Below, one piece after another: positions 15,660 to 62,427 of a stretch of DNA of 64,000 nucleotides (positions are counted from its first letter, which is position 1; every line of letters begins with the position of its first letter). The DNA comes from Hemiscyllium ocellatum. Its lineage: Eukaryota. Where the stretch lies: contig NC_083409.1 in NCBI RefSeq assembly GCF_020745735.1, forward strand, positions 6,747,534-6,811,533, given 5' to 3'. A program made the position numbers and the translations under genes. The notes below the pieces were generated by a model that was not told where the DNA came from, did no database searches, and saw only the letters and a program-made list of their open reading frames with translations.

Positions 15660-16700
15660 CGGTGTCACAGAGTCAGAAAGACCTGCAACATATAAAAAGA
15701 GGTCCTTCCACCCATCGTGCTTGTGCCAGTCAAAAACAACCACCTCACTATTCTAATTTTCCAGTCCTTGGCCCATCGCCTTGTATACCTTGGCAGCCCA
15801 AGTGTATATACTACTTCAATATTGTGAGGGTCTTTGTCTCTCTCACCCTTACACGCAGTGAGTCCCCGATTCCCACCACCATCTGGGTGAAAATGGTTTT
15901 CCTCACATTTTCTCTAAACCTCATGCCCATGACCTGACATCTATCTCCGTTGTCATTGATCCCTTCATCAAGGGGAAGGACGCATACACCTCATGATTTT
16001 ATACATCTCAGTCATGTACACGATCAATCTCCTCTAAGGGAAACAACTCCAGTCTGTCCAATCTCTCTTCACAACAGAAACTCTCCAGATAACATCCTGG
16101 TAAATCCCCTCTGCAACCTCTCCAGAGCTATCATATCCCACTGATAACGTATATTCCCGAACTACATACCAATATTGTAGCCGTGGCCGAACCAACATTT
16201 CATTTCGATCCAAAAAAGTCTTCCTGCCCTTAAAATCGTCACCTCAACTAAAACAAAAGGAAAACCATACAGTCACAAAGATGTACAGCAAGGAAACAGA
16301 CCCTTCGGATCAACCTGTCCATGCCGATCAGATATCCTAAATAAACGTAGTCTAATTTGACAGCATTTGGCCCATTTCTCGTTAAAACCTTCTTATTCAT
16401 ATAGCTGTCCAGATGCCTTTGAAGTGTTGAAATTTTCCCATCTGCCTTCTTAACCATTTTATCCAACTGTCCTGAAACCTTAAAGGACCAGTGCACATGC
16501 ACACAAGGTCCCTCTGATCCTGGGTGCACCCCAGGGTCCGACTGTCCAACATGCATACATCTACCTTGTGTGTCCTGCCCAAGTGCGTCATATCACATTT
16601 ATATGGATTAAATTCAATTTGACATTAATCAGCCCATCTGACCAGTTCGTCTCTATCCTTCTATAATCTAAGGCTATCCATCCCTTCAAATTTTCAATCA
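15660..16700 (-). mobile_element. CR1 LINE 3' fragments
   Basis: Reverse-complement CR1 3' sequence (GGAAACAGACCCTTCGG tail motif at ~16291; CR1 UTR-like sequence at ~15850-16150). Confidence 0.7.
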
Positions 16701-16987
16701 TTTGTAAACATCCAGGTCAGACTTCCTACAATCAAATTGAAATAATTCACATGACGCAAAATCAGCAAAGACCCCTAATTCAGATGGGTATGGCTCAATC
16801 GTGGAGACAAGACATCCAGTCAGAAAAACACTCGACAATCAGTACCCTCTGCTTCCTGACAAGGAGAGATACAAATGGAAAGCGAGAGAATGAAAGCTGA
16901 GAAAGGGAAAAGAGGGGACAAGGAAGAGAGGAGGGAGAGAAGGACAGGTGAGTGAGTCAGAGAGAGGAAAGAGGAAGTGCGATGGGC

Positions 16988-17067
16988 TGACGTGGCTCTC
17001 TCTGCCTGATGCCATTTACATACTGAGGAACACCCAGTCAGACTCTCACAGGCAGCTGCTTTATAAA
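16988..17067 (+). promoter_or_regulatory. Ig kappa V promoter, cluster 1
   Basis: TGACGT (16988), octamer variant ATTTACAT (17014-17021), GAGGAA (17025-17030), E-box CAGCTG (17053-17058) and TATAAA (17062-17067), about 60 bp upstream of the ATG. The layout is conserved in cluster 2. Confidence 0.75.
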
Positions 17068-17127
17068 GCAGAGCCCAGTGAAGAGAGAGTTTATCAGGAA
17101 CCAGGCACAGGGACAGGAACACGCACC

Positions 17128-17176
17128 ATGATTTCACACATCCGGCTGATCTGGCCCTTGGCATTCTGCATCACAG
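17128..17176 (+). CDS. IGKV: Ig kappa light chain leader exon (MISHIRLIWPLAFCIT-G), cluster 1
   Basis: ATG, hydrophobic signal peptide and phase-1 donor G|GTAC. The 186-bp intron 17177-17362 ends in CCCCTCAG and has the same length as in cluster 2. Confidence 0.92.
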
Positions 17177-17362
17177 GTACAATTCTCTCTCCTTCCATCT
17201 TGAATCTTTAGCTGCTCTCCATTTCACTCCAATTCCACTGACTTGTGATTGAACGGAAAATGCTGAAACCAGAGGAATGCTCAGTGTCTCCAACAATCTC
17301 TTATTTGACTGGCTCTTTCTGTGAAAGTTCTGACGTCACTGTGTTTCTCTCTGACCCCTCAG

Positions 17363-17692
17363 GTATCAGTGGGGACATCACCATGAGCCAGACTCCTCCG
17401 GTGCTGTCAGTGAGACTGGGCCAGACCGCAACCATCACCTGTACGGCCAGTCAATCTGTTAGCAATGAGCTTTCCTGGTACCAGCAGCGAGAAGGTCAGA
17501 AACCCTCACTCCTGATGTACAATGCAGCAGCTCGATTCACAGGAGTCTCCGATCGATTCACCGGCAGTGGATCAGGGACCAGTTACATCCTGACAATCAG
17601 CAACATTCAGAATGAGGATGTCGCTGACTATTACTGCATGCAAGGTTACAGCAACCCTTTTACGTTTGGTAAAAGAACCAAGCTCAGACTGA
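17363..17692 (+). CDS. IGKV: Germline-joined Ig kappa V-J exon, cluster 1
   Basis: Translates as [106 protein letters not shown]. It has both Cys, WYQ and DYYC. V runs straight into J with no heptamer/nonamer, and the donor is A|GTAAGT at 17692/17693. Confidence 0.96.
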
Positions 17693-18129
17693 GTAAGTAA
17701 ACCTCAGTCCTCCATTATTCACCCTGTCAATACTGAAATACGCTTTCTAAAACACAAATGCTGAATTGTTGAAGGCATTAGTGGGGAGCTGCAGTGAATG
17801 AAATGGTTGATTGAGGAGCACTGTGTCTAACAGGGTGTCCAGCTGTATTTCTTTACTTTCATTGCGCCTTTAAGCAGCAAGTTATAAGTCAGTAAGTTTT
17901 ACTCACCTTGTGAAGGGGCTCTGTCCATTTGCAGCCTGTGGTCCCATTCCTGCAGCATGGAGTGAAATCAGTGAGTAACGTCCTACCAGTCTCAGTGTGA
18001 CGGACACGGGCAGAGTTTAATGTGAGCTCTGGTTCCCTCTCCCAGTCTCTGGTCTCACTGACCTCAGCAACAGCAGCAGTAGCACAGTGAGACACCGAGC
18101 TCCCACCTCCCCCAGCTTTAACTTTGCTC

Positions 18130-18370
18130 AATCACATAATCACAGAATTGTAACAGTGCACATGGAGGCTATTCTTCCCATCCTGTCTGTACGGCCTCTC
18201 TGAATGAGCAATTCACTGAGTGTCATTCTCCAGTCTTCTCCATGTCAGACTGTACATTGCTCCTTTTCAACTAAGTCTCATTCCCTTTGGAATGTTTCAA
18301 TTGAAGCTGCCTCCACCACACTCTCAGGCAGTGCATTCCACACCTTAACCACTCACTGGCTGAAAACGAT
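18130..18370 (-). mobile_element. SINE/CR1-tail fragment shared with cluster 2 (60685-60905)
   Basis: Aligns in inverted orientation to 60685-60905 at the same position relative to J, so the insertion predates the cluster duplication. Confidence 0.7.
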
Positions 18371-19169
18371 TGTCATCACCTCGCTTTTGCTTCTTTTACC
18401 AATTACATTCAATCTATGACCTCTCGTTCTCCATTCTTTCCTGATTAGGGGTATTTTCTCCCTATGTACTCTGTCTACATCCCTCCTGATTTCAAGTCCT
18501 CGATCAAATGTCCTCTCTGCCTTTCCTTTCCCAAGGAACATAGTCCCAAGATCTCCAATCTATCTTTTCTCGTCGACGTTCGTTTTTGCTGAAACTTCCT
18601 TGGGATTGTTTTTTGCCCTCTCTGCAAAGTATTAATATCATTCCTGAATTATTCACCTGATCTATACTCCTGAGTCCCATTTGCCACCATTTGACCCATA
18701 TCGCTCTATACCTTTCCTGTTCATGTATCTGCGCAAATGTTTTTTAAGATGTTGTAATGTTTTCACCTCCACCACTTCCTCTGGCAGCTCATTGCATATA
18801 ATTCAGCTGTCTGGGTGAAAAAGTTGCTCTCATGTCCCTTTTAAATCTTTTCCCTCTCACCTTAAACCTATGCCATGCAGCTTTGTGCTCCCCTACTGTG
18901 GAAAAAGACATTGGATAACTAATTTATCTATTGTCATGGAACAGGCCAGACCCCCTCAAAACATTTCGAGAAGTTAGTCCAGATTGTCATTTTTCTAGTT
19001 GTTCTGAGCAGGTGAACAGTGGATATTCCAGGAATGATGCAGTTGGTCAAAACCCCTTGGATTTAAACAAAACAGAATTTATTTACAGACTACCAACTGA
19101 AACATACAAAAGAGAACAGAATATAGAATAACATAACCTATCTGAGACCCATTCGACTATCTCACTTAA

Positions 19170-19980
19170 TGCCCACCAACAGGGTGATAGCAGATGGAAG
19201 GTATTCAGCCCGGAGCTCAGTGATTGATGGTGTTCTGCAGGGATCTGTTCTGCAGGGATCTGTTCTGGGATTTATGCTCTATGTGATTTTTAGAAACGAC
19301 TTGAATGAGGAAGTGGAAGTGTGGATTTGTAAGTTTGCGAATGACAAAAGATTGGTAGAGTGGTGGATAGTGTGGGTGGGCTGTTGTCGTTTACAATGGG
19401 ATATTGACAGTAAGTAGAGCTGGACTGAGAAGTGGCAGATGGAATTCAACCTGGAAAAGTGTGAAGCAACTCATTTTGTTAGGTCAAATTTGAATGCAGA
19501 TTACAGGGTTAAAAGCAGTTTGGAGGAACAGAAGGATCTTGGGGTCCATGTCCATAGATTTCTGAAAGTTGCCACCCATGTTGATAGGGTTGGTAAGAAG
19601 GAGTATGGTGTGTTGGTTTTCATGAGCTGGAAAATTGAGTTGAAAGGCCCCAAAGTAAATCGCTGGTTAGACTACACCTGAAATATTGCATTCGGTTCTG
19701 GTCACCTCATTATCTGAAGGGCGTGGAAACTTCACAGAGGATGCAGAGGAGATTTACTAGGATGTAGCCTGGACTGGAGGATATGTCTAAAGAAGAAAGG
19801 CTGAGGGAGCTAGGGCTTTCCTCATTGGAGAGAAGAAGAATGAGAGGTGACTTGATAGAGATGTAAAAAGATGAGAGACATAGATAGAATGGATAACCAG
19901 AGACTTTTTCCCAGGGCAGAAATGGCTTCCTTCAGGGGACCAAATTTTAAGGTGATTGGAGGAAGGATTAGGGGAGATGG
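19170..19980 (+). mobile_element. CR1 LINE RT/3' fragment
   Basis: GVLQGSVLG..VIFRNDL..CKFANDK (19169 ORF) and MEFNLEKCEATHF (19439 ORF). Confidence 0.85.
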
Positions 19981-21370
19981 AGTCATAGAGATGTACAGCA
20001 TGGAAACAGACCCTTCGGTCCAACTCATCCATGCTGACTAGATATCCGAACCCAATCTAGTCCCACCTGCCAGCTGCCAGCCGATATCCCTCCAACCCCT
20101 TCCTATTCATTTACCCATCCAAATGTCTCTTAAATTTTACAATTGTACCAGCCTCCACCACTTCCTTTGACAGCTCATTCCATACACTTACCACCCTCTG
20201 CGTGAAAACGCTCCCCATTAGGTATCTTTACATCTTACCCCTCTCACCCTAAACCTGTGCCCTCTAATTCTGGAGTCCCCCACCCCAGGAAAGAGACTCT
20301 GTCTATTTATCTTATCCAGGCCCCTCATGATTCTATAAACTTCTATAAGATTGTACCTCAGCCTCCTATGCTCCAGGGAAAACAGCCTATTCAACCTTCT
20401 CTACAACTCAATTCCTGCAACTCTGGCAACATCCTTGTAAATCTTTTCTGAACCCTTTCACGTTTCACAACATCTTTCCGATAGGAAGGACATCAGAATT
20501 GTACACAATATTCCAAAAGTGACCTAACCAATGACCTGTACAGCAGCAACATGACCTCTCAACTCCTGTACTCAACACTCTGACCAATGAAGGAAAGCAT
20601 ACCAAATGCTTTCTTCACTATCTTATCCATCTGTGAGTCCAGCTTCAAGGAGCTATGAACTTGCACTCCAAGGTCTCTGTTCAGCAACACTCCCCAGGAT
20701 CTTACCATTAAGTGTATAAGTCCTGCTCAGATTTGCTTTCCCAAAATGCAGCACATCGCACTTATCTGAATTAAACGCCATCTGCCACTTCTCAGCCCAT
20801 TGGCCAATCTGATCAAGAGTCTGTTGTAATCTAAGGTAACCTTCTTTGCTGTCCAATATACTTCCAATTTTGATGTCATCTGCAAACTTACTAACGGTAC
20901 CTCTTATGCTCACATCCAAATCATTTATATGAACGATGAAACATAGTGGACCCAGCACCGATCCTTACGGCACTCCACTAGTGACAGGCCTCCAGACTGA
21001 AAAAGAAACCGTCAACCACCACCCTCTGTCTTCCACCTTTGAGCCAGTTCTGTATCGAAATGTCTAGTTCTGCCTGTATTCCGTGAGAACTAGCCTTGCT
21101 GACCAGGCTTCCATGGGGAATCTTGTTGAATACCTTACTGAAGTCTACATAGATCACATCTACTGCTCTGGCCTCATCAATCCTTTTTGTTACTTTTTCA
21201 AAAGACTCAATCAAGCTTGTGAGACATGATTTCCACACACAAAGCCATGTTGACTATCCCTAATCAGTCCTTGCCTTTCCAAGTACATGTATATCCTGTC
21301 CTTCAGGAATCCCTCCAACAACTTGCCCACCACCGACATCAGGCTCACTGGTCTCTCGCTCCATGGCTTG
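19981..21370 (-). mobile_element. CR1 LINE RT to 3' end
   Basis: INDLDVSIRGTVSKFADDIK (20653-20958) and VDFSKVFNKIPH (20978-21238). The AGTCATAGAG tail is at 19981. Confidence 0.9.
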
Positions 21371-22024
21371 TCCTTACAACCCTTCTTAAACAGATGTCAG
21401 AGGTAGGTTCTTTACACAGAGAGTTGTTGGTGTGTGGAATGCACAGTGGTAGAGTCAGATACATTTGGGACATTCAAGCAACTCTTAGATCAGTACATGG
21501 ATGATAGTCAAATGAAGGGTATGTAGGTTCATTTGATCTTAGAATCATGTTTGATGTTTAATGATGCTGCTCACTCCCCTTTCATTATACAAATGTTTGT
21601 TTGAAAACTGTAAAGCTTCTTCAAGTAGATAAACTCAGACATTTTGGAGTTTATGTGTTTACGACTCTGAGAAAAAGCCAAAGACAACCTAACCTTGTTA
21701 AAGGAGCAGCATCGTCACACTCTGGCCCTCATGATTTTATAAAACCTCTAAATGGCCGTCCTCCAGCTCCTGCTCCAGGGAAAAAGTCCCAGCCCATCCA
21801 CCTTCTCCTTATAACTCAGACCTTTCCATCTCAGTAACATCATTGTAAATTCTTTTTGCAACTTTTCGTTTTATAACATCATTCCTCTAGCAGGGTGACC
21901 AGAATTGTACCCAGTGCTCTAATTGTGCTTTTATCAATATCTTGTACGACTGTAAATGACATCCTGTCTTCTGCTGTCAGCATTCTGACTGACGAAGGCA
22001 AGTGTGTCAGCCATCTTGTTCACC

Positions 22025-22310
22025 ACGGTAACACGGAGGCTTAGTGGTTAGCTCTCCTGCTCACACTGCCAAAGACCTAGACTCAATTCCCATCGTGCCC
22101 GCGTGGATTTTGTCTGGGTGCTCGGCTTTCCTCCCACTGTCCAATAATATGCAAGTTAGGTGGATTGACAATGCTAAAATGTTCATAGATTCCAGGGATG
22201 TGCAGGTGAGTTGGATTGGCCATGGAAAATGCAGGATTACAGGGATAAGTATGATGCTTTTTGGAGAGTTAGTATGGGCTTGTTGGGCTGAATGGCCTGC
22301 TTATACACTG
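22025..22310 (+). mobile_element. tRNA-derived V-SINE (HE1-like)
   Basis: tRNA-like head GGCTTAGTGGTTAGC...TCAATTCCC, a V-domain-like GCGTGGATTTTGTCTGGGTGCTCGGCTTTCCTCCCAC, and a CR1-like tail. Confidence 0.65.
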
Positions 22311-22549
22311 TTGATAGTTCTGGATGTAGGTTTATCTGGATGACATTTCATGACCATACTTGGTAATATCTTAAGTGAGGCTCCAAATGAAGTTTCACCC
22401 TAAGGCTCACTGATGTTGTTACCTAGTATGGGGGCGAAAAATCCGAAAATGAACCTTCCAGCTCAGCGAGCAAACCTCCATCCAGAACCTCAACCTGAGC
22501 CACAGGTCTTCTCAAAATTCGCTAACTGTTGATAGTCCATGATTCACCC

Positions 22550-25500
22550 TTTCTTTCAATGATGCCTCTTTCAAGAAACTATGCACCTGCACTCCTGAGC
22601 CTCTCGTTTTGACAACTCTCCCCAGGGTCCGATCATTAACTTTGTATGTCCTGACTCAGTTTACGTTATCAAAATGCAATACCACACCTTTATCTGAATT
22701 AAGCTTCATTTGCCATTCCTCGACCCAGTGGCCCAAGTGATCAATATCTCATTGTACTCTCAGACAGCTTTAGTCATTGCCCACATGTCACCAACTTTGT
22801 TGTCATCTGCAAAGTTACTAACCATACCTCCTCAATTCTCAACAAAACTGTTTGTATAAATGATAGATAAGAGTGGATACAGTGTGGAACACAGCTTTCT
22901 CGTCTGAACAACAACTTTCTACCATCACCCTCTGTCGTCTACTATCAAGCCAATTTTGTTTCCAATTGACTAGATTTCCCTGGACTCCATGGGATCTAAC
23001 CCAATTATTCCAGTCGACCATACAGGACCTTTTTGAAACCCTTGCTAAAGTCGATGTAGACAAATATCGATCACTCTGCCTTCAACTATTTTCTTGGTCA
23101 CCTCTTCAATCACTTTTGTGCGACACGATTTCTCACACACAAAACCATGCTGATTACCCCAATCAATCCTGACCTTTCCAAATACATTTGTAGATACTAC
23201 CTCTTAAAATTTCCTACAAAAACGTATCCACCACTAATGTCAGACTCACCGCTCTATGGTTCCCTGGATTCACCTTGCAGCCTTTCTTAAATAATGGCAC
23301 AAAATCATCCAGTCTTCAAGCCTCCCCTGTGGCTGTCAATGACACAAATATCTCTGCAAGGGGCCTCCCTGTCACTTCCTGAACTTTCCTTAAAGAACAA
23401 AGAAAATGTACAGCCCAGGAACAGATCTTTTGGCTCTCCAAGCCTGTGCTGATCCAAACCCCCACCTACTCATGCATCAGTTCTGACGAACCTTAAATGG
23501 ATCTACTGTGCCTGCCTATAGTACCACTGCTAGCAACACGTTCCAGGCACATACCACCCTCTGTGTAAAGTACTTTCAACATGTATCCCCATTAAATGTT
23601 TCTCCTCTCACCTTGAATGTGTGACCTCGTGTTATTGAATCCCTCACCCTGAGAAAAAGGTTTCTCTCTTTGCACCCTGACTTTACGCTTCATAAGTTTG
23701 TAGATGTCAATAAAGTCCATCCTCAATCTCCTTTATTGATAATGAAAAAGTCGTAACCTACACCACATCTCTTTATAGCTAGCACCTTCCGTAAAAGGTA
23801 ACATCCTTGTAAACCATCTCTGTACCCTTTCCAAAGCGTCCACATCCTTTTGGTAATGTGGCGACCAGAAATGTGCACACTATTCTAAATGCAGCCGAAC
23901 CAAAGTCTTGTACAATTTTAATATGACCTGCCAGCTCTTTTAATCAATACCCCGTCCGATGAAGGCAAGCAGACCATATGAGTTATTGACCACGCTCTCT
24001 AATTGTGCAGCAAAATTCAAGGTGCAATGGATCTGAACTCCCAGATCTCTCTGCTCATAAACGTTTCCTAAGGCCCTTCCATTTACAATATAATTTGCTC
24101 TAGAATTAGACCTCCAAAAAAGCATCACCTCACATTGGCATTGATTGAACTCCATCTGCCACTTCTCTACCCAATCTCCATTCTGCCTATATTCTCCGGT
24201 ATTGTTTGACAGTCCCCTATACTTTCTGCTGTACTTCAGATCATCTACAAATTTAATGATCAGACTACCAATGCCCTCTTTCAGATCATTTATGTATATC
24301 ACAAACAACAATGGCCCTAGCATTGATTCCTGTGAAACACCACTGGTCATCTTTCTCCATTTCAAGAAACTCCCTTCAACTGCTATTCTTGTCTCCTGTT
24401 CCTCAACTGGTTCTTTATCCACCTAGTTAGAACACCCTGCACACCATGTGACTTCATGGGCATTCTGGGTTAGACTTAATTAAGTCTTGGGCTTTATCTA
24501 CCTTCTTGAGATTTAAGAACAGACTACAACTCCTTTTCTTCTTTAATGTGGACTCTGTTCAAGACGTCACCATTTACTTCCTGAATTTATTGTTTGCTTC
24601 CATCTTTCTCAACTGTAAATACTGAGGCAAAATATTTGTTCTATAACTCACTCATCTCTTGTTTTACATAAAAATTTGAAAATTTCTAAGGGTGAAACAT
24701 TTGGAGTTGACCCATGGGATACGATCCATGATCATGACATTACTATGGATTCTCCTTTGTCCTTTTCCACTGTCTTCCTAAACCATCTGAGACAATGATC
24801 ACTCTTCCCTAAATGTCCTCTCAATGACACTTGATCGACTTGGGTTTCTTGGCTCCCAAGGTCCAAGTCTAGCAGAGCCTCCTTTCTCATTGGGTGGTGA
24901 ACACACGGCTGGAGAAAATTCACCTGAACACAGATTCACAACGCTGGCCCCTCTCTGCCCTTCACACTGCTACTATCCCAGTCTATATTCAAATAATTAA
25001 TGTCCCCCCAATTGAGGCAACGCTATCTTGTTTGCACCTCTCTCTGAGTTCCCTGTAAATTTGTCCCTCTCCATTCTTCCCACTAGTTGGTGACCTCGAG
25101 ACTGCACTGAATAATCTGATCGCACCTTTCATGTTTCTTGTCTTGAGCCAAATCGATTCTGTCCTTGACCCCTCTGAAATGTCGTCTCCCTCCAGCTCTG
25201 CTCTGATCTCTTGAACGAATTCCATGACTTTCGTGAACACCTTGTATCTTGGGATATTTAACACTCCCTCCTGTCCTTCTTTCCACCCAGTTTCTCTTGG
25301 AGACACAACATCAGATTTCCACTTGACAATCAGTGTCTGTAATTCCCCAGTCTTATTCCCCACACTCCTTGCAGTCCCATACATGCACAGTCACCCTGAT
25401 TTACAATTTAGTACTCTCATGGACGCTCCACACTGATACCAGCTGCTGCTCAAGCTCCCAAACCCAGAGCTCCAACTGCTGTCACTAACCACAATTCCTG

Positions 25501-25750
25501 CTCTCATGATATACCACCAGGACTCATCTGGAAATTTCCACATAGAACAGGCTGCATATTCTCTCCACTCACTGGTTATCGCTTGCAAAGTTTTCATAAC
25601 AAATTGCTGCAGCAGGGTTTGCAATCCACTGTAAATGTCTTTGGGAAAGCCTGAGGTGTGGAATGTTCAATAGAAATGCAGATCTTTCATGTCTGTGAAT
25701 GAAATGCATGCCCACCTCCATGAACTGCTCTACTGAAGGCACTATATCGG
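22550..25750 (-). mobile_element. CR1 LINE(s): RT fragments, endonuclease and ORF1 remnant
   Basis: GVSQESMLGPLLFVIYINDL..KFVDD (23940-24422), APE N-terminus ARSVGNKTGEL..WKSDVV (24989-25384), and an ORF1-like EYAACSMWKF (25391-25624). Confidence 0.85.
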
Positions 25751-25964
25751 GCTGGGGAACAGCTCCAGCCTCCCCAGGTGGTCTCGAGCATGGAAGGGGC
25801 GGCATGGCAGACTATTGGACGGGGAGCAGTCAGCAAGGCCACAGTGTGGAGCACTCTCCTCTCAGATTCACAATGTTGTGGCTTCATGTCCCACTCCAGA
25901 GATATGAGCACGTCATCCAGGGTGAGAGTGCAGTGCACTACGGAGGGAGTGCTGCACTGTCGGG

Positions 25965-26670
25965 GGTAAGTGCCGAGGGATTTCCAAACTGTCGGAGGGT
26001 CAGTACTGAAGGAGTGCTGCACTGTCAGAGAGTCAGAACTGGGGGAGTGTCATACTGTCAGAGGATCAGTACTGAGGGAGTGTTGCACTGTCACACGTCA
26101 GTATTGAGGGAATGCTGCATTATCAAAGGGTCAGTACTGAAGGAGTGCTGCACGATTAGAGGTTCAGTGCTGAGAGAGTGCCACACTCTCAGAGGGTCAG
26201 TACTGCGGGAGTGCTGCGCTGTTAGAGGATCAGTACTGAAGGAGTGCTGCACTATCAGAACGTCAGTACTGAGGGAATGCTGCACTATCAGGAGGTCAGT
26301 ACTGATGGAGTGCTGCACTATCAGAGGATCAGTACTGAAGGAGTGCTGCACTATCAGGAGGTCAGTACTGATGGAGTGCTGCACTATCAGAGGATCAGTA
26401 CTGAAGGAGTGCTGCACTATCAGAGGATCAGTACTAAGGGAATGCTATCAGAACGTCAGTATTGAGGGAATGCTGTACTATCAGTAGGTCAGTAATGATG
26501 GAGTGCTGCACTATCAGAGGTTTAATACAGAGAGAGTGCCGCACTCTCAGAGGGTCAGTACTGAGGGAGTGCCACACTGTCAGAGGATCAGTACTGAGGG
26601 AATGCTGCACTTTCAGAGGGTCAGTACTGAGGGAGTGCACCATTTCGGAGGGTCAGTGCTGAGGGAGTGC
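25965..26670. repeat. 33-bp tandem repeat (~21 units) in the cluster 1 J-C intron
   Basis: Unit approximately CACTATCAGAGGATCAGTACTGAAGGAGTGCTG. It gives the 11-aa periodic RGSVLKECCTI in ORF 25699-26487. Confidence 0.92.
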
Positions 26671-27189
26671 GCCATGTCGGACAGACCACCTTTCATTTGG
26701 AAAAATCTGATATCTGCCTCTCAGGAGGCACAATTAGAATATAACAGGGCAGTTCCCCCTAGCGTTCTGATTCTCTGCTCATGTCAATTTGCTATCTGGG
26801 ATCTTGCTGTGTACAAGCACAAGTGAGGGGCATGAGTTATTCCGAGTTGAGGATAGATGCTTCACGATTCCAAGTCTTTCTTTGAGGTTGGAATCTTTGT
26901 GTCCTCACACTAATTATTCTCCGTGTGCTCTCAGCTTCCAGGGGTCAGGAGGTCATGAGGAGTAATGAATTTGCCTGACCCTGGGACAATGAGACTCATT
27001 GCAGTCTCATCCTTGACCTCACCCCAGTGCGGGGCAGCAAGGTTTGAAATGAAATCTAAAACCTTTGACACAGGCACCCAACCTGACTACATCCTGAAGT
27101 GCATTGATTCAAGTCTGCTCCAGTGTTCTCTGATAAAGTCGTTCTGATCTGTGAGTGATCGAGGGTTTGTTAAAGAGATATTGAGACAA

Positions 27190-27730
27190 AGGATCGATGT
27201 CCTTTCGGGAAGGAAATCTGCCGTCCTTACCTTGTCTGGCCCACACGTGACTCCAGACCCACAGCAATGAGTTTAACTGTTAACCACCCTCTGTAATGGC
27301 CGAGCAAGGCCTTCCATTCTAACAATCGCTGGGAAGTCTCAGAAACAGAATGAAACTTGATAGGCAACCTGGCATCGACCTTAGCACCGGAAACAACATC
27401 AAAGAAAACTCTGTCTACCTTGTTACATCCTCCTTACTAACATCTGCGGGCTAGTGTCAAATTCAGGAGAACTGTCTCACAGACTAGACTGACAAGCAAC
27501 AGCCTGACACAGTCGTATTCACATAATTATACCGAACATTCTCCCAGACACCACCATTGCCATCCCTGCGTAGGTCCTGTCCCACCAGCAGGAAAGACCC
27601 AGCAGAGGTGATGACACAGTGATATAGAGCCAGGAGGGAGTGACCCTGGAAATCCTCAACATTGACTCTAGGCCTGATGAAGTCACATGGCATCAGGCCA
27701 GACATGGACAAGGAAACCAGTGGGTGTCTC
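27190..27730 (+). mobile_element. L2-clade LINE/SINE fragments (tail motif and endonuclease N-terminus)
   Basis: AAGGAAATCTGCCGTCCTTACC..CCAGACCCACAGCAATG tail-type motif, plus degenerate endonuclease coding (GELSHRL..QQPD.V; TIAIP..LSH.QDRPSRG-like). Confidence 0.55.
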
Positions 27731-27849
27731 ATCAGCGGTAGGGATACAATTGGAGAAATTTCTGAAGGTCGGATGAATCTCCATTTTGGGGTAGTCAGCT
27801 TGGCTTTGTCAGAGGGAGTCATGCCGAACAAATCTTTTGGAATTTTGTC

Positions 27850-28985
27850 GAGAAAGTGACCAGCTGTGTAGATGACGGAGGTGCAATTTATATGGTTTAT
27901 ATGAATTTCAGTAAGGCCTTTGACAAGGTTGTACTTGGGAGGCTGATAAAGATGATACAAGGCCAAGGGATCCAGGGTAACTTGGCAAGTTGGATCCAAA
28001 CTTGGCTTTGTGACAGGTGACAGAAGGTGATGCTAGAAGGCTGTTTGTGTGACTGGGTCCAGGGTGCAGTCGGATATCACAGGGATCAATGTTGGGTCCC
28101 GCATTGCTTGTGATGTACAGGAACAATGCCGAAGGGAATGTGGAGGTGGACGATAACTGATGTGAATGTGTTTGTGGATGATGTGAAGTTTGGTCGCATG
28201 GTTGTCAGTGAAGAAGAAGGTTTTCGGTTACAACAGGATATAACCGGATTGGTCAGATGGGAAGATCAGAGGCAGCTCGAGTTTAAACCTGATAAATGTG
28301 AGGTGATGCACTTTTGAAGATGCAAAATGCTAACAGGGCAGTTATGAAGGCGATCGGGGGGTACTTGCCTTAATCATTTTAGGTGGAGATTGAAAGAGCA
28401 TGGAGTATATGTTCAAGCTGTACAGAACAGTAATTCGGCCATAGCTGGAGCGCTGTGTGCAGTTGTCGTCACCGTACTGTAGGAGGGATGTGATTTCACT
28501 GGAGGGGGTGCAGAGGAGATTCACCAGAATGTTCCCAGGGATGGAACATTTCAGATGTGAAGAGGATGAATAAGCTGTTGTTGTTTTATTTGGAGCAGAG
28601 AAGGTTTAGGGAGTGAGGGGGATCCTGATGGAGGGGGACAAGGTTATGAGGGTAATGGACAGGGTGATAGAAAATAGCTGTACCCCTGACAGGGAGGGTC
28701 AAGAACAAGTTGGCTCACATTCAATGTGAAAGGCAGCAGCTTTAGAGAGGATTTGTGGAAAAGTTTTTTCACCCAGACTGTGGGGGTCCTGAATGTCTGG
28801 GAGGGGAGTTGAATTGGGAAATCTCACAACTTCCACAAAGTACTTGGATGAGCACCTGAAATGACCGAACATTCTGGGTTATGGGCCCACTTCCGGAGTG
28901 TGGGCGGAGTGTTGATTTAGTGTTTCGTTGGTGGCATAGACCTGATGGGGCGAATGACCATTTCTATTCTGTATGATTCTATGAA
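27850..28985 (+). mobile_element. CR1 LINE RT to 3' end
   Basis: ATGAATTTCAGTAAGGCCTTTGACAAGGT (MNFSKAFDKV, ~27901), FVDDVKF and EFKPDKCEVMHF (28126 ORF), and a TATGATTC tail at ~28975. Confidence 0.88.
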
Positions 28986-29244
28986 TTCTCCCGCTGATTA
29001 CTATGTACTGTTCTCCCTCGGCTGATGAATCAGTCTCTCTGCCACATTGAACTCAGAATGTACACTGGGTGGGGGACTTCAAACTGCAGCAGCAAAAATG
29101 AATTTTAATAAATGTCCATTATTTTGTTAGGTTTGTTCTGTATTGTATACAAATGTTCAAACTGATAGTTCTGCAAAATAAATGTTTGGAGAGTTAAAAT
29201 CCTGCCGAATGGCAGGGATTAAAATTGTTTCTCTTGTCTTTCAG

Positions 29245-29573
29245 GCGGTGAGAATTCACAACCCAAGCTGACCCTGCTGCCCCCCTACCCGGAGCAGGTC
29301 AATGCCACTGGCACTGCCACCCTGGTGTGCCTTGCCAATCACTTCTATCCCGATGAGCTGGAGGTGCAGTGGAAGAAGGATGGTGCAGTCATTTCGGACG
29401 GGGTTCAGACCAGCAACTACCTGCGAGCTTCGGACAGCACCTACAGTGTCAGCAGCCTGCTGACCCTCTCTGGGTCTGACTGGGAGTCCAACGCTCGCTT
29501 CTCCTGTGCCGTCACCCATGTGACCCTCCCCTCCCCTCTCAGCAAGAGCATCACGAGATCAGAATGTGTTTAG
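29245..29573 (+). CDS. IGKC: Ig kappa constant exon, cluster 1
   Basis: Acceptor TTGTCTTTCAG|GC. Translates as (S)GENSQPKLTLLPPYPEQVNATGTATLVCLANHFYPDELEVQWKKDG...FSCAVTHVTLPSPLSKSITRSECV-stop. It has C1-set Cys/Trp/Cys, the penultimate interchain Cys, and phase compatible with the J donor. Confidence 0.97.
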
Positions 29574-30088: not shown

Positions 30089-30094
30089 AATAAA
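30089..30094 (+). terminator. Probable poly(A) signal, cluster 1
   Basis: First canonical AATAAA I found after the stop (516 bp downstream). It is conserved at the homologous position in cluster 2 (49538-49533). Confidence 0.5.
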
Positions 30095-30995: not shown

Positions 30996-31544
30996 CTTCT
31001 GACTCTGTTTATTTCTGTCAGCCATGTCTCCCTGACTGGATCAGATTATCTGTCCCAATCAGGGAATTCATATTCTGTTAGATTCACTTGGCTGACCTCC
31101 AAGCTTCTGGACAATATGATGGAAACTCGGACACTCTTTCCTAATCTCAGGCGGCTCGAGGAGGTGGGATGGGAGGTAGCACATTTTGCTCTGGCGATGA
31201 AGTTGCATTCAATTGCCCAGCTCCTGGGTACCCAATCCGTGCACACACCATGCAGTATAACTGATCACACACACAGGCATTTCTGTTGGGGTACACAGCA
31301 TGATGGGTCTAGGCTCGCTGCTTCCAACCAGAATTATGTAGATTCAAGGCCTGTGCCAGAGATTTGGGAATGGTGCTGAACTTTGTCAGTATGGTGTACG
31401 CAGTGAGGGGAATCCTGCTCTGTCACACAGCCAGTCTTTTAGATGAGCCCTAAATCTTGTCCTGGGACTAATTTCAAAAATCAGGGAAGGTGATCACATG
31501 CTGAGTGTCACTTGTCTCTCACAGCCCACCATCATCCAACAGTC

Positions 31545-32080
31545 TTCCCCTCACTCCCCAGTCACGAAGCCTGGGCCTGGGTCTCCCCCTCACTCCCCAG
31601 TCACGGAGCCTGGGCCTGGGACACACCCTTCATTCCCCAGTCACGGAGCCTGGGCCTGGGTCTCCCCTCACTCCCCAGTCACGGAGCCTGGGCCCTGGGT
31701 CTCCCCTCACTCACAGTCATGGAGCCTGGGCCTGCGTCTCCCCCTCACTTCCAAGTCACTAGTCTGTGCCCTGTGTCTCCCCCTCACTCCCCAGTCACGG
31801 AACCTGGGCCCTAGATCACCCCATCACTCCCCAAACATGGAGCCTGGGCCTGGGTCTCCCCTCACTCCCCAGTCACGGAGCCTGGGCCCTGGGTCTCCCC
31901 TCACTCACAGTCATGGAGCCTTGGCCTGGGTCTCCCCCTCACTCCCCAGTCATGGAGTCTGGGCCTATGCCTCCTCCTCATCCCCAGTCACGGAGCCTCT
32001 GCCTGGGTCTCCACCTCATTTCCCAGTCACGGAGTCTTGACCCTGGGTCTCTCCCTCACTCCCCAGTCACGGAGCCTGGA
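31545..32080. repeat. Minisatellite, ~14 units of ~38-40 bp, C-rich on + strand
   Basis: Unit approximately TCCCCTCACTCCCCAGTCACGGAGCCTGGGCCTGGGTC. It explains the Pro-rich ORFs at 31498-32140. Confidence 0.92.
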
Positions 32081-50061: not shown

Positions 50062-50390
50062 CTACACACATTCTGATCTCCTGATGCTCTTGCTGAGGGG
50101 AGAGGGGAGGGTCACGTGGGTGAGAGCACAGGAGAAGCGAGCGTTGGACTCCCAGTCAGACCCAGAGAGGGTCAGCAGGCTGCTGACACTGTAGGTGCTG
50201 TCCGAAGCTCGTAGGTAGTTGCTGGTCTGAACCCCGTCCGAAATGACTGCACCGTCCTTCTTCCACTGCACCTCCAGCTCATCGGGATAAAAGTGATTGG
50301 CAAGACACACCAGGGTGGCAGTGCCCTTGGCATTGACCTGTTCCGGGGAGGGGGGCAGCAGGGTCAGCTTGGGCTGAGAGTTCTCACGGC
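50062..50390 (-). CDS. IGKC: Ig kappa constant exon, cluster 2
   Basis: Acceptor TGTCTTTCAG|GC. Translates as (S)RENSQPKLTLLPPSPEQVNAKGTATLVCLANHFYPDELEVQWKKDG...FSCALTHVTLPSPLSKSIRRSECV-stop. It is 329 bp, like C1. Confidence 0.97.
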
Positions 50391-51899
50391 CTGAAAGACA
50401 AGAAAAACAATTTTAATCCCTGCCATTTGAACGGAATTCAACCCTCACAATATTCACTGGCAATACAATCTTTTTGAACATTTTTACTCAATACAGAATA
50501 AACCCAACAAAAGCACAGACATTGTTCAAATTGCTTCTTGGGATCTGAGTGTCACTGGCAGGGCCAGCATTCATTACCGTCCCTAGTTGCCACTGAGAAG
50601 ATGATGGCGAAGCAGCAGAGAGAGAAGGGACAGTTTTGGACCATCGTTTATAGAATCAATGTGGGCATCTGGAAGGGCTATCAATGGGGGAGCATTTCAG
50701 TGACAGTGATCAGAACTCAGTGAGATTGAGAGTAGGGATGGAAATGGAGAACAATGGAGCAAGTGTAAAAGTTTTCATTTTACTAAACTGTGTGGTGCTT
50801 GGTAAAAGTGGATCAGAACCAATGACATGATGGGAAATCAGTGTCAGGGCAGTGGGATCCCTCGAAGGATGAGACATACTGTTCCGAATCTGTTCCCACA
50901 ATGCGTAAGCGTTGGACTCCCAGATCTCGACCAAATGAACAAGAGGATTGGGGTTCATGTACTGACATGGATTGGGAACTGGTTTTCAGTCAGCACAGAA
51001 AGAATGAGTCTTTTCCTGACTGGCTGGTAATTATAACTGAGAGTGCCACAGGGATCAGGCCTTGGTACCCAGTTATGCATAATATATAATAATAGAGTCA
51101 GAGGGACGTAAAATGCTCATCAGCCCATTGTGTCCATCCTGGTCAAAAAAAAACAACGCAATAATTGTCATCCATTTTTCCAGCAAAAGGTAAGTGTATG
51201 AAATGTGTGTTTAAGAAGGACTTTGATATATTTCGAAGGATTAAAGGGATCAAAGAAAGTGGGGAGAAAGTAGGAACAGGGGACTGTGTTGGATGATCAG
51301 CCATGATCACATTGAATGGTAGAGCAGGCTTGAAGGGCCGAATGGCCTACGGCTGCTCCTATGTTTGATGTTTCTATCTGTTTCTCAGATAATGAAGGAA
51401 TGTATCTCATCATTTTGAAGGTGGAAGTCAGATGTGTGTGGAGCTGGAAGATGGGGCCATGGTGATTAATGAATGTAGGCCAGTGAGGTGGTTAAGAAGA
51501 CACATGGGATTAACTGTTTTTCTTTTTCCCTTGATGGAATGAGGGCATTGCTGGATCCACAGCATTTAATGCCCATCCCTAATCACCCAAAGCGCAGTTT
51601 AGAGTCACCCACATTGCTGTGGGTCTGGGGTCACATGGTAAGGATGGTAGTTTCCTTCCCTAAAGGACATAAGGGAATCAGATGCTTTTTCCTGACAATA
51701 AACGATAGTTTCATGGTCATCATTAGTCTCTTAATTGCAGATTTTGTTTTGATTGAATTTGAATGCCGCCATCTGCTGGATTCTAACCCTGGTCCCCAGA
51801 ACATTACCTGGATCTCTGGATTAACATTTCAGCAATAACACCATTAGACCATCACCTCCCTTAACTCATTTTTAGTTGACTGTGAAAGCAAGGAGTTGG

Positions 51900-53620
51900 T
51901 TTATTCTGGAACTGTATAAAACCCCAGTCAGAGCACAGTGAGAGAACTGTGTACAGTTCTGGTCACTACATTACAGGAAGGTTGTGATCTCTCGAGAGAC
52001 CAGGACAGAGGAAGAGTTTGTCTCGAATGGAGACTTTGAGCTTTGAGGTTGGATTGGCTGGGAATGTTTTCATTGTAACAGAGGTGGCTGAGGTGAGATT
52101 TGATTGTGGTGTGTAAAACGATGAAGGGCCTTGACAGGGAGGGTAGAAAGGACTGATTTCCACCTGCACAGAGGGCAATAACCATGGGGAGAGATTGAAA
52201 TCAGTTAGGGACAGGATTAGAGGGAATTTGAGGGCATTTGTTTTCACCCAGAGGTTGGTGGAATGTGGGACTCACTGTCTGAAAGGGTGGGAGAGGCAGA
52301 AACCCTAATCACATTGAAAAAACACTGGATATTGACTTGAAACAGCGAAACCTCCAGAACTATGGAGCAAGAGCTGGAAAGTGGGATGGAGCGTGATATC
52401 TCTTTAACAAATCTCCGATCATCCACAGATCAGGAGAACTTTGTCCGAGAACATTGGAGCAGACTCAGATCCACACACTTCAGAGAAGAGTCACGTGTCT
52501 GTGTAGAAGATTCCAGATTATATTTCCAACCTTGCTGCACACTATTGGGCTGAGGTCAAGGGTGAGGCTGCAAAGATTCTCAGTGTCCTAGGGTCAGACA
52601 TTGTCACTGCTCCTCATGATCCCATGAATCCTGAAAGGTGGGAGTACGCATACAATGGATGAGGATTCTGATCAGGAGACTCCAACCGTAAAGAAAGACT
52701 TGCACTTGTGTAGCACCTGTCCCCAACTCAGGATGTCCCAGTGGATCTTTCCAGCAGACTGTGCACAGCGAGATCCCAAACACCATGTGATAATTAGCAG
52801 AGAAATACATTCTGAGTGATTTTGACTGTGGGATAATTATTGAACAGGGTCACCAAGGGGAACTGCCTGCTCTTCATCCAATAGTGCCATGAAATGGCAT
52901 CTTTCACAACTGAAAGACTCTCAGTTCATTTAAAAAGTGAAGAATAGTTCCTTGAAGATGAAGTTGCAGGTAGGTAGTGGAGTGACAAAGACATTTGGTT
53001 TGCTTTCCTTTATTGGACAGTGCATTGATTATTGGAGTTGGGAGCTGTTGCTGCTGTACAGGACATTGGTGAGGGCACTTTTGGAATACTGTGTGCAATT
53101 CAGTTCTCCTTGCTGGAGAAAAAATGTTGTGAACCTTAAAATGATCCAGAAATGATATACAAGGATGTTGCCAAGGTTGGAGGGTTTGCGTGAAAGGGAG
53201 AAGCTGACTAGGCAGAGGCTGTATTCCCTGCATCATTGCAGGTTGATGGGTGACCGTATAGAGGTTTATAAAATCATGAGTGGCATAGATCAGGTGAATA
53301 GAGAAGAACTTTTCTCCAGAGTGGGGGAGTCCAGAACTGGAGGGCATAGGCTGAAGGTGACAGGGGAATGATTTAAAAGGGACCTAAGGGACAACGTTTT
53401 CATTCAGACGGTGTTAAATGTATGGAATGAGCTGCCAGAGGAGGTGGTGAAGGCTGGTACAATTACAACATTTAAAAGGCATGGGTATGTAAATAGGAAG
53501 ATGTTAGAGGGATATGGGCCAAATGCTGGCAAATGGGACTAGATTAATTTCGGATATCTGATCAGCATGGACAAGTTGGACCGAAGGGTCTGTTTCTGTG
53601 CTGTCCATCTCTCTGACTCT
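51900..53620 (+). mobile_element. CR1 LINE 3' fragments (two)
   Basis: VRALLEYCVQFSSPCWRK (52937 ORF), RLMGDRIEVYKIM (53165 ORF), and CR1 tails. Confidence 0.85.
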
Positions 53621-53959
53621 AATTATATTTCAATCCAGGTTCTCCCAAAGACATTTACATTCAGTTTTGTTCGACAAGCAGTCACTGTTGCAATGCCAGT
53701 AACCTGGCAGCCAGTTTCTACACAGCAAGATCCCACTAGAAGCAATGAGCTCAAAGAGCAATAATGATGTTGGCTCAACGACAAATATTAGCCTGAACTC
53801 AAGTCAAACAGAAAGTAATTGAGTTCAGCTGGATGGAAAATGAGAAAATGGAAGGTAAAGGAGAAGGTAGGATTGCCGTTGAGTGATGGAATGATTGTTA
53901 CGAGAAAATAAAAGAAAGGGATGGAATTTTTGAATATCATAAAAGTGCAGGGAAAATCA

Positions 53960-56900: not shown

Positions 56901-56965
56901 CAAGATCAAATGGCAGAGAAGATTCCATGGGCTGAATGGCTGATTTCTGCTCCTATTTCTTAAAG
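53960..56965 (+). mobile_element. Near-full-length CR1 ORF2, degenerate
   Basis: TGTCTAAATGCACGAAGCATT (CLNARSI, ~53986), YDVVGITDTWL, YLDFQKAFD (~55850), TTTGCAGATGAC (FADD, ~56072) and a 3' tail at ~56950. Confidence 0.88.
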
Positions 56966-59608: not shown

Positions 59609-59822
59609 AAAAAGTGCGGACTGCAGATGCTGAAAACCAGAGTTTAGATCAGAGTGGTGCTGGAAAAGCACAGATTGTCAGGCAGTATCCGAGGAGCAGA
59701 AAAATCGACCTTTCGGCTAGAGGAATCCTGATGAAGTGCTTATGCCCGAAACGTCGATTTTCCTGCTCCTCGGATGTTGCCTGACCTGCTGTGCTTTTCT
59801 AGCACCACTCTGATCTAAACGC
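59609..59822 (+). mobile_element. Palindromic hammerhead-bearing short element inserted in CR1, with 12-bp TSD
   Basis: Flanked by GTGGCAAATGGA at 59597-59608 and 59823-59834. Inverted arms span 59642-59820. Confidence 0.85.
59723..59760 (+). ncRNA. Minimal type I hammerhead-ribozyme-like motif
   Basis: GAATC-CTGATGA-A-GTGC-TTAT-GCCC-GAAACGTC-GATTT. Stem I is GAAUC/GAUUU, the core is CUGAUGA plus GAAA, and the self-complementary ACGU precedes a GUC cleavage triplet. There is one stem II mismatch and activity is untested. Confidence 0.55.
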
Positions 59823-61362: not shown

Positions 61363-61397
61363 TCAGTCTGAGCTTGGTTCCTTTACCAAACGTAAGC
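61363..61397 (-). CDS. IGKJ: Ig kappa J segment, cluster 2 (LTFGKGTKLRL)
   Basis: GCTTACGTTTGGTAAAGGAACCAAGCTCAGACTGA followed by donor GTAAGT. The FGxG motif is intact. Confidence 0.96.
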
Positions 61398-61436
61398 CAC
61401 AGTGAGAGCTCCCAGTGCAGAGGCTGTACAAAAACC
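61398..61436 (+). other. 23-bp-spacer recombination signal sequence of J
   Basis: CACAGTG (61398-61404), a 23-bp spacer, and ACAAAAACC (61428-61436). Heptamer and nonamer are perfect consensus. Confidence 0.97.
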
Positions 61437-61867
61437 TCAGCTCTCTGCTTCTCTCTTATCGGTGTCAATCTCTCTCTGTCTCTGTCTGTCTCTCACTCAC
61501 TCTCACCCTCTCCCTGCCCCTCTCTGTCTCTCCCTCATTCATGTTTCTTTCTCTCTCTGTCTCTCTGGGTTGTTTCCAGCTGGGCTCGGGAGGTTTGTGA
61601 TTTTTTTTATGTTAAATCTTGCAGCTGCACTTCACATGTGGCCATTCAGTGTAAGAGGGAAAGTGGAGGCCTTCGGTGAGCGTTGAGATATCACGGGGAT
61701 TGGAGTGTGTCGTGGACAGTGGCAATCCCAGTTTGGGGTAATTTGATCAATTTCATTTAGATCTAACTGTGGCTATATCAGTTCAGGCGGTAAAACTGTG
61801 TCCATTATTATACATTTTATTCAACTGTGGGACGTGTGAGTACAGGTGGTTGTACTTTATGTATTGA

Positions 61868-61895
61868 GGTTTTTGTTCAGCTCTGTATCACCGTG
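61868..61895 (-). other. 12-bp-spacer recombination signal sequence of V
   Basis: The minus strand reads CACGGTG (61895-61889), ATACAGAGCTGA (12 bp) and ACAAAAACC (61876-61868). V-12/J-23 is the kappa-type configuration. Confidence 0.96.
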
Positions 61896-62192
61896 AAGGC
61901 CAGCTGTAACCTTGCTGACAGTAATAGTCAGCGACATCCTCATTCTGAACGTTGCTGATTGTCAGGGTGTAACTGGTCCCTGATCCACTGCCGGTGAATC
62001 GATCAGAGACTCCTGTGAATCGAGTTGCTGCATTGTAGATCAGGAGAGAGGGTTTCTGACCTTCTCGCTGCTGGTACCAAGCAAGGTTGCTGCCAATGTC
62101 TTGACTGGCCGTACAGGTAATGGTTGCGGTCTGGCCCAGTCCCACTGATAGCATTGGGGGAGACTGGCTCATGATGATGTCCCCACTGATAC
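61896..62192 (-). CDS. IGKV: Ig kappa V segment (unrearranged), cluster 2
   Basis: Translates as [95 protein letters not shown]. It has an intact acceptor and an RSS. Confidence 0.97.
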
Positions 62193-62378
62193 CTGAGGGG
62201 TCAGAGAGAAACACAGTGAAGTCAGAACTGTCACAGAAAGAGCCGGTCAAAGGAGAAATTGTTGGAGACACTGAGCATTCCTCTGGTTTCAGCATTTTCC
62301 CTTCAATCACTAGTCAGTGGAATTGGAGTGAAATAGAGAGCAGCTAAAGTTTCAAGGTGGAAAGAGAGAGCTTTATAC

Positions 62379-62427
62379 CTGCGACACAGAATGCCAGGGG
62401 CCAGATCATCTGGATGTGTGAAATCAT
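62379..62427 (-). CDS. IGKV: Ig kappa leader exon (MISHIQMIWPLAFCVA-G), cluster 2
   Basis: 49-bp exon with donor G|GTAT and a 186-bp intron, paralogous to 17128-17176. Confidence 0.92.

What the first reader, a model, noticed from the sequence alone, without database searches (positions are those of the whole stretch)
17363..17692. Germline-joined (pre-rearranged) in-frame Ig kappa VJ gene
Seen: V reads directly into J (..TGC ATG CAA GGT TAC AGC AAC CCT TTT ACG TTT GGT..) with no RSS. The leader intron, promoter and 11.5-kb J-C intron are all retained, so this is a DNA-level join and not a retrocopy. Using cluster 2 as the ancestral proxy, the junction is the intact V end (CCTT) plus J lacking 2 nt (GC|TTACG), with no N additions, giving a 9-residue CDR3 (MQGYSNPFT). 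Established: germline-joined Ig genes occur in cartilaginous fish, including nurse-shark NS4 light chains, and are attributed to RAG activity in germ cells. Inference: this is a heritable fixed-specificity light chain.
Basis: partly seen in the sequence, partly recalled or inferred. Interest (0 to 1): 0.75.

Follow-up and report, generated by a model that had tools for sequence, protein, structure and literature searches.

The report
Germline-joined shark kappa light-chain gene
A bamboo-shark-type antibody kappa light-chain gene has its V and J pieces already fused, in frame, in the assembled genome; this kind of gene was described in nurse sharks in 2000, so it is a clean new example and not a new kind of thing.

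Summary
On the + strand there is a complete kappa (type III/NS4-like) minicluster:
- promoter;
- leader exon 17128-17176;
- 186-bp intron;
- one V-J exon 17363-17692 with no recombination signals;
- an 11,552-bp J-C intron;
- C exon 29245-29573.

The spliced reading frame is 235 aa and open. CDR3 is MQGYSNPFT.

A sister cluster on the - strand (62427-50062) is split, with a 12-spacer and a 23-spacer signal. It is about 91% identical to the joined gene on both sides of the join. The only structural difference is a clean loss of signal, intervening DNA and signal, plus 2-4 coding-end bases, with no added bases.

That is the footprint of a RAG-type coding joint, as Lee et al. (2000) reported for nurse-shark NS4 genes. 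A public Chiloscyllium punctatum contig carries another joined kappa gene. This scan has already noted several more on other DNA of this same genome.

Three things are not shown:
- No public run confirmed or refuted the junction.
- No RNA or protein record carries this CDR3.
- The J motif reads FGKR instead of the canonical FGxG, so function as a light chain is uncertain.

Verdict: a new member of a known kind, of modest interest.

The parts
17014..17067 (+). Promoter of cluster 1: octamer-like ATTTACAT (17014-17021) and TATAAA (17062-17067). Both are conserved in cluster 2.
17128..17176 (+). Leader exon (ATG at 17128; donor ACAG|GTACAA).
17177..17362 (+). Leader intron, 186 bp. It is 91.9% identical to that of cluster 2 and the same length as in nurse-shark NS4 genes and in L001.
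17363..17692 (+). Fused V-J exon. V runs to 17659 and J from 17660. CDR3 (MQGYSNPFT) is 17638-17664. The J motif FGKR has AGA at 17674-17676. The donor follows 17692.
17693..29244 (+). J-C intron, 11,552 bp. The first ~740 bp are homologous to cluster 2. The rest carries a reverse-transcriptase fragment and a 33-bp tandem array.
29245..29573 (+). C-kappa exon of cluster 1 (C1-set domain, stop at 29571-29573). It is 94.2% identical to the C exon of cluster 2.
30089..30094 (+). First AATAAA downstream of the C exon.
61896..62427 (-). Comparator cluster 2: leader 62427-62379, 186-bp intron, V segment 62192-61896.
61868..61895 (-). Cluster 2 V signal: heptamer CACGGTG, 12-bp spacer, nonamer ACAAAAACC.
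61363..61436 (-). Cluster 2 J signal (GGTTTTTGT, 23-bp spacer, CACTGTG; 61436-61398) and J segment 61397-61363 (FGKGTKLRL).
50062..50390 (-). Cluster 2 C-kappa exon. Its protein is identical to the C region of annotated C. punctatum kappa chains.

Best explanation
This is a germline-joined member of the shark kappa (type III / NS4-like) light-chain family, in a hemiscylliid, most likely a Chiloscyllium bamboo shark.

**Origin (inferred).** An ancestral split minicluster, like cluster 2, underwent one V-to-J coding joint in the germ line. The 12-signal, about 450 bp of intervening DNA and the 23-signal were excised. Two to four coding-end bases were trimmed and nothing was added.

**What is shown.** The rest of the transcription unit was left untouched: promoter, leader, 186-bp leader intron, J donor, 11.5-kb J-C intron and C exon.

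**Consequence (inferred).** The gene can be transcribed and spliced without RAG. It would give a 235-aa precursor with one fixed CDR3, MQGYSNPFT.

**What remains open.** Inheritance in the germ line is not shown. Nor is it shown that the gene is expressed, or that the protein pairs with a heavy chain. The J motif is FGKR instead of FGxG, so I put a working light chain at roughly even odds.
For: - **Fused in-frame exon.** There are no signals at this exon, and the only signals in the window are those of cluster 2.
- **Homology on both sides.** The two blocks that flank the join are 90.9% and 87.3% identical to the split sister cluster. They bracket exactly the signal, intervening DNA and signal.
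- **Complete gene.** The spliced ORF is intact at 235 aa, and splice sites, promoter elements and a poly(A) signal are present.
- **Family.** The domains are V-set and C1-set. The best matches are annotated shark kappa chains: C. punctatum 83-85%, and a nurse-shark light chain (named 'Ig lambda-like' in nr) 74%.
- **Selection.** The pairwise dN/dS between clusters 1 and 2 is 0.28 in the frameworks, 0.12 in C and 1.39 in the CDRs. With L001 as outgroup, the cluster 1 lineage has 13 non-synonymous and 13 synonymous changes, an omega of about 0.3. This is not pseudogene-like.
- **Precedent.** About 10% of roughly 50 nurse-shark NS4 genes are germline-joined, with little evidence of N region at the joints. 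They were found in all seven wild sharks tested, and two of them were detected in neonatal spleen and epigonal organ RNA (PMC2193156; review PMC5192425).
- **Independent example.** C. punctatum contig BEZZ01000502.1 (L001) carries another joined kappa V-J in genomic DNA.
- **Same genome.** Scan notes report several further joined kappa genes on other DNA of this genome. I did not check them.
Against: - **No independent read support.** No indexed run holds more than 0.30 of the sampled words.
- **Unclear read picture in run X3.** This run matches the cluster-specific flanks exactly. Yet at several letters private to cluster 1, every contig laid carries the paralog letter. The likely cause is contig simplification in a multi-copy family, but absence of this allele in that animal is not excluded.
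- **No expression record.** No protein or transcript-derived record carries this V-J or CDR3.
- **Broken J motif.** J reads FGKR. Cluster 2 and all 13 relatives that have a J read FGxG.
- **No date for the join.** The nearest split genes available (cluster 2, L002, L003) are all about 9% divergent.
Confidence: 0.82

Rival explanations
1. The join is real and inherited, but the gene is no longer, or never was, a working light chain. It is an 'ORF-status' relic on its way to becoming a pseudogene, like two of the six joined NS4 genes in nurse shark.
For: - The second glycine of the J motif is replaced by arginine, while cluster 2 and all 13 relatives with a J keep FGxG.
- The C exon has five replacements private to this copy, against at most one in cluster 2. 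One of them creates an N-A-T sequon.
- No transcript or protein record carries this sequence.
- Joined pseudogenes are known from nurse shark and are noted elsewhere in this genome.
Against: - The 235-aa frame is open, and all splice and promoter signals are intact.
- Omega on this lineage is about 0.3, and 0.12-0.28 in C and the frameworks.
- The counts of non-synonymous against synonymous changes do not differ significantly between the two lineages (13:13 against 8:9).
Confidence: 0.35
2. The join is somatic or an assembly artefact. A B-cell rearrangement, or a collapsed or mis-joined read path, was taken into the consensus, and the inherited allele is split.
For: - No independent run confirmed the junction.
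- In run X3 the letters private to cluster 1 are not seen in the contigs laid.
Against: - Any one somatic junction at one of many clusters would be a tiny share of reads in any tissue, so it should not win a consensus (inference).
- The junction lacks N bases. Lee et al. found likely N region in somatically rearranged NS4 cDNAs but little sign of it in the germline joins.
- Divergence from paralogs is the same inside and outside V, at about 9%. There is no local excess such as hypermutation would give.
- Joined kappa genes occur in an independent assembly (L001), and the scan notes many at other loci of this genome.
Confidence: 0.07
3. The gene is a primordial, never-split V-J exon, or a conversion or retro-insertion from processed RNA, and not a RAG-type rejoining of a split gene.
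For: Only the absence of signals, which any of these origins would give.
Against: - The gene is only about 9% diverged from split genes of its own family on both sides of the join, non-coding DNA included. A never-split origin would need the same signals to have been inserted repeatedly.
- Both introns are retained, which excludes a processed copy.
- Lee et al. reached the same conclusion for NS4 by phylogeny.
Confidence: 0.03

Closest known systems
Nurse-shark NS4 (type III / kappa) germline-joined genes R4, R7, R18, RE18, R6, R19 (Lee, Fitch, Flajnik, Hsu 2000, PMC2193156)
   Same: - Same isotype and the same order of sharks (Orectolobiformes).
- Same minicluster layout, with a 186-bp leader intron.
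- The joined gene sits among split paralogs whose V-J spacing is about 500 bp.
- The joint has trimmed ends and no N region.
- The joined gene lies within a few per cent to about 10% of split relatives.
   Different: - A different genus (bamboo-shark type).
- A different CDR3, from an independent join.
- Germline presence across individuals and neonatal expression were shown for NS4 but are untested here.
- This copy has FGKR in J.
Chiloscyllium punctatum joined kappa gene on BEZZ01000502.1 (L001, protein chiPu_0011747)
   Same: - V-J is fused in genomic DNA of a bamboo shark.
- The leader intron is 186 bp.
- The V-J-C frame is full length.
   Different: - A different subfamily (69% identity).
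- CDR3 is MQDYSVPQTLS.
- J is the canonical FGKG.
- The J-C intron is only about 3.5 kb.
Fully germline-joined isotypes: lambda (type II) in all cartilaginous fish studied, sigma-2 (type I) in skates, and the nurse-shark joined sigma-2 chain that pairs with IgM1gj (PMC5192425, PMC2192082)
   Same: A heritable pre-assembled V-J that gives a fixed CDR3. Its proposed role is as an early-life or innate-like chain.
   Different: - Those are whole isotypes or loci fixed as joined.
- Here one member of a mostly split kappa family is joined.
- A partnership with a particular heavy chain is unknown.

Membership tests
Germline-joined shark kappa (NS4/type III) gene | V and J are contiguous in one exon, in genomic context, with no recombination signals. 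| tested here: met
Germline-joined shark kappa (NS4/type III) gene | The rest of the minicluster (promoter, leader intron, J-C intron, C exon) is retained and homologous to split members on both sides of the join. | tested here: met
Germline-joined shark kappa (NS4/type III) gene | Sequence membership of the shark kappa family. | tested here: met
   The domains are V-set and C1-set. The best matches are annotated shark kappa chains, at 83-85% to C. punctatum. The C region of the sister cluster is identical to the C. punctatum C-kappa.
Germline-joined shark kappa (NS4/type III) gene | The junction is consistent with RAG-type coding-end processing and has no N region. | tested here: met
   The junction is CCTT|TTACG. 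The proxies are V ends CCTT (cluster 2) or CCTTGA (L002, L003) and J GCTTACG. That gives 2-4 nt lost and none added. The result depends on the proxy.
Germline-joined shark kappa (NS4/type III) gene | The joined form is present in non-lymphoid or germline DNA, and in several individuals. | tested here: inconclusive
   No run holds more than 0.30 of the words. The contigs laid match the flanks but do not show the junction either way.
Germline-joined shark kappa (NS4/type III) gene | Transcribed without rearrangement (in NS4, mainly in neonates). | tested here: inconclusive
   No RNA holder was listed. No protein record carries this V-J or CDR3. No raw RNA reads of this species were laid.
Functional Ig light-chain V-J-C gene (IMGT-style criteria, from established knowledge) | Open frame, start codon, canonical splice sites, the two conserved V-domain cysteines and the conserved FR2 tryptophan. 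| tested here: met
Functional Ig light-chain V-J-C gene (IMGT-style criteria, from established knowledge) | J motif F-G-X-G. | tested here: not met
   The motif is FGKR (AGA at 17674-17676). Cluster 2 and all 13 relatives with a J have FGxG.

The most novel reading that the evidence does not exclude
The joined gene is not a decaying copy. It is a heritable, RAG-independent receptor chain that has begun to evolve away from ordinary light chains. Signs of this would be the altered J bulge (FGKR), a new N-A-T sequon and other private changes in C, and an overall omega still near 0.3. [quoted passage not shown]
Probability: 0.1. Interest if true: 0.55.

Novelty: new member of a known kind. Interest (0 to 1): 0.3.

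Why it matters
Germline-joined antibody genes show that RAG-type recombination has acted in shark germ cells. They also show that pre-assembled receptors with a fixed binding site can be inherited. This copy adds a clean, in-frame example in a bamboo-shark-type genome, next to a split sister cluster that serves as a built-in control. With the other joined copies noted in the same genome, it could help measure how often such joins arise and how long they stay intact. It does not change the picture set out in 2000.

Tried and rejected
- **Public runs.** I searched twice for runs holding the gene (after two busy errors). The best share of words was 0.30, and no listed holder is on record as RNA.
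- **Laying contigs.** I laid contigs of four runs from four organisms on 16000-20000. Run X3 matches the unique flanks exactly, so it is the same species. The family-conserved core is covered only by short contigs dominated by paralogs. None of the 32 pieces listed bridges 17659|17660. This is not a test of the join.
- **Exact-product look-ups.** The 146-aa ORF across the join and the cluster 2 V ORF are not on record.
- **Junction-focused protein search.** Residues 105-150 gave 7 candidates, none with this CDR3.
- **C. punctatum chromosome models.** I could not examine a possible orthologous locus.
- **Closer split proxy.** L002 and L003 are as distant as cluster 2, about 9-10%. I could not tighten the date of the join.
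- **Re-inserted excision product.** The only matches to the intervening sequence elsewhere in the window are GA-rich low-complexity hits.
- **Excess of private replacements.** A comparison with the protein consensus suggested 13 against 1 for the joined gene. Polarising at the DNA level with L001 gave 13:13 against 8:9. I do not claim accelerated evolution.

Full report
**What is there.**

Cluster 1 lies on the + strand. Its parts, in order:
- an octamer-like ATTTACAT at 17014 and a TATAAA at 17062;
- a leader exon, 17128-17176;
- a 186-bp intron;
- a single exon, 17363-17692, that reads from framework 1 of a V-kappa domain straight through CDR3 (MQGYSNPFT, 17638-17664) into a J segment and ends at a strong donor (CTGA|GTAAGT);
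- a C exon at 29245-29573, which lies 11,552 bp further on behind a good acceptor;
- an AATAAA at 30089.

Spliced, the three exons give an open 235-aa precursor. Pfam sees a V-set and a C1-set domain.

**The built-in control.**

Cluster 2 is a second cluster on the - strand, convergent with the first. Its parts are:
- leader 62427-62379, again followed by a 186-bp intron;
- V segment 62192-61896;
- a CACGGTG / 12-bp spacer / ACAAAAACC signal;
- a GGTTTTTGT / 23-bp spacer / CACTGTG signal;
- J segment 61397-61363;
- C exon 50390-50062.

These are the only recombination signals in the window.

The two clusters align in two blocks. Block one is 16948-17652 against 62609-61903, at 90.9%. Block two is 17660-18430 against 61395-60620, at 87.3%. 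What cluster 1 lacks is therefore exactly the signal, the intervening DNA and the second signal, which is 498 bp in cluster 2.

Identity by segment:

| Segment | Identity |
|---|---|
| Promoter | 92% |
| Leader intron | 92% |
| V | 91% |
| J | 32 of 33 bases |
| First 500 bp of the J-C intron | 90.5% |
| C exon | 94% |

Both introns and the promoter are retained, so this is a join in DNA and not a processed copy.

**The junction.**

Cluster 1 reads ...AGC AAC CCT T|TT ACG TTT GGT. Cluster 2 offers V ...CCT T and J GC TTACG TTTGGT.

However, two split C. punctatum genes fetched here (L002, L003) end V with CCTTGA. V may therefore have lost 2 nt as well.

No reconstruction needs N or P bases. 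Untrimmed ends would be out of frame, and the observed trimming restores the frame.

I found no copy of the intervening sequence elsewhere in the window. There is thus no sign of a re-inserted excision product.

**Whose genome.**

The closest proteins are annotated kappa chains of Chiloscyllium punctatum (83-85% over V-J). Next come Hemiscyllium ocellatum, then a nurse-shark light chain (named 'Ig lambda-like' in nr) at 74%.

The C region of cluster 2 is identical in protein to the C. punctatum C-kappa. The window is from a bamboo-shark-type (hemiscylliid) genome. I cannot name the species.

**What is known.**

- Lee et al. (2000, PMC2193156) showed that about 10% of roughly 50 nurse-shark NS4 (kappa) genes are germline-joined.
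- Those genes share the 186-bp leader intron, and their split relatives have a V-J spacing of about 500 bp.
- Their joints show trimming, possibly P nucleotides, and little sign of N region.
- Joined genes were present in all seven wild sharks tested. Two of the six joined genes are pseudogenes.
- Two of them (R4, R18) were detected in neonatal spleen and epigonal organ but not in adult blood cells.
- The review PMC5192425 restates this.
- In public bamboo-shark data, contig BEZZ01000502.1 (L001) carries another kappa gene with V-J fused in genomic DNA.
- Three C. punctatum RefSeq models (P0003, P0004, P0006) read cleanly from V through J to C. Models of split genes, by contrast, read into the signal.
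- Notes of this scan, which I did not check, list several further joined kappa genes on other DNA of this same genome, some in frame and some not.
- No paper in the held library describes joined kappa genes in Chiloscyllium.

**Is it germline?**

I could not test this directly.
- No indexed public run holds more than 0.30 of the gene's sampled 31-mers.
- Only 3-6% of those words occur elsewhere in the window. The shares seen therefore reflect words shared with paralogs across the family.
- I laid contigs of four runs from four organisms. The DNA run X3 gave contigs identical to the window in cluster-specific flanks: 16474-16633, 16813-17010 and 19116-19273 with no difference, and 18347-18511 with one. 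It is therefore the same species.
- Inside the family-conserved core, every X3 contig laid carries the paralog letter at several positions private to cluster 1. None of the 32 pieces listed bridges the junction.
- The tool itself warns that contigs drop rare variants and show presence, not absence. A single-copy path beside family-consensus paths about a hundred times deeper is just such a case.
- I record this as unexplained and inconclusive.

The case for germline status rests on inference.
- One somatic junction at one of many clusters cannot dominate a consensus.
- The joint has no N bases.
- Divergence from paralogs is even across V and its flanks.
- Joined kappa genes recur in independent assemblies.

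**Is it functional?**

In favour:
- The frame is open and all signals are intact.
- The conserved cysteines and tryptophan are present.
- There is purifying selection. The pairwise dN/dS between clusters 1 and 2 is 0.28 in the frameworks, 0.12 in C and 1.39 in the CDRs.
- With L001 as outgroup, the cluster 1 lineage has 13 non-synonymous and 13 synonymous changes, an omega of about 0.3. Cluster 2 has 8 and 9. The leader intron splits 7 to 7.

Against:
- The J motif reads FGKR. Cluster 2 and all 13 relatives that have a J read FGxG. By the usual criteria for J genes (established knowledge), this makes it 'ORF' status and not plainly functional.
- The C exon has five private replacements. One of them creates an N-A-T sequon.
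- No transcript-derived or annotated protein with this V-J or CDR3 exists in the 5.8-billion-protein collection within the length band searched. No exact ORF is on record either.

I put a working light chain at about even odds.

**Age.**

The nearest split genes I could reach (cluster 2, L002, L003) are all about 9% divergent in non-coding DNA. The join is younger than that split. I cannot date it further.

**Verdict.**

The germline-joined reading is well supported by anatomy and precedent, but not proven by reads. 'Fixed-specificity light chain' is plausible but unproven, and the broken J motif weakens it. This is a new member of a known kind, and the scan has found the same kind before on other DNA of this genome.

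Noticed in passing
window 50062-62427 (-): A complete split kappa cluster that looks competent to rearrange, convergent (tail to tail) with the joined cluster. The two C exons are about 20.5 kb apart. Its V heptamer is CACGGTG (G at position 4). Its V coding end is 2 nt shorter than in two C. punctatum split genes.
   Followed up: partly
window 17674-17676 and 29245-29573: The joined gene has R in place of the second G of the J motif. Its C exon has five private replacements (G, Y, T, V, T), including a new N-A-T sequon. The C region of the sister cluster equals the family consensus.
   Followed up: partly
window 25939-26670: A tandem array of 33-bp units (about 22 copies, 78% matches) inside the J-C intron of cluster 1. 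It produces long spurious ORFs on both strands.
   Followed up: no
window 31542-32079: A tandem array of 39-bp units with a 194-bp higher-order period, about 2 kb downstream of the C1 exon. It produces proline-rich ORFs in several frames.
   Followed up: no
window 20656-20958 (-): A reverse-transcriptase fragment (Pfam RVT_1, E 6.6e-8) in the J-C intron. Several other ORFs that look retroelement-like in the window gave no Pfam match.
   Followed up: partly
window 16474-16633 (run X3): One DNA run of the same species holds two versions of this upstream flank, with 0 and 12 differences, at similar depth (20 and 30). This is either a divergent allele or a close paralog of the region upstream of the joined gene.
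   Followed up: no
L001:10001-14428: C. punctatum contig BEZZ01000502.1 carries a different germline-joined kappa gene. Its CDR3 is MQDYSVPQTLS, its J is FGKG, its leader intron is 186 bp and its J-C intron is about 3.5 kb.
   Followed up: partly
L003:2325-2900: This split C. punctatum kappa gene has degenerate heptamers on both sides: CACAATG after V and CAAAGTG before J. It may rearrange poorly.
   Followed up: no
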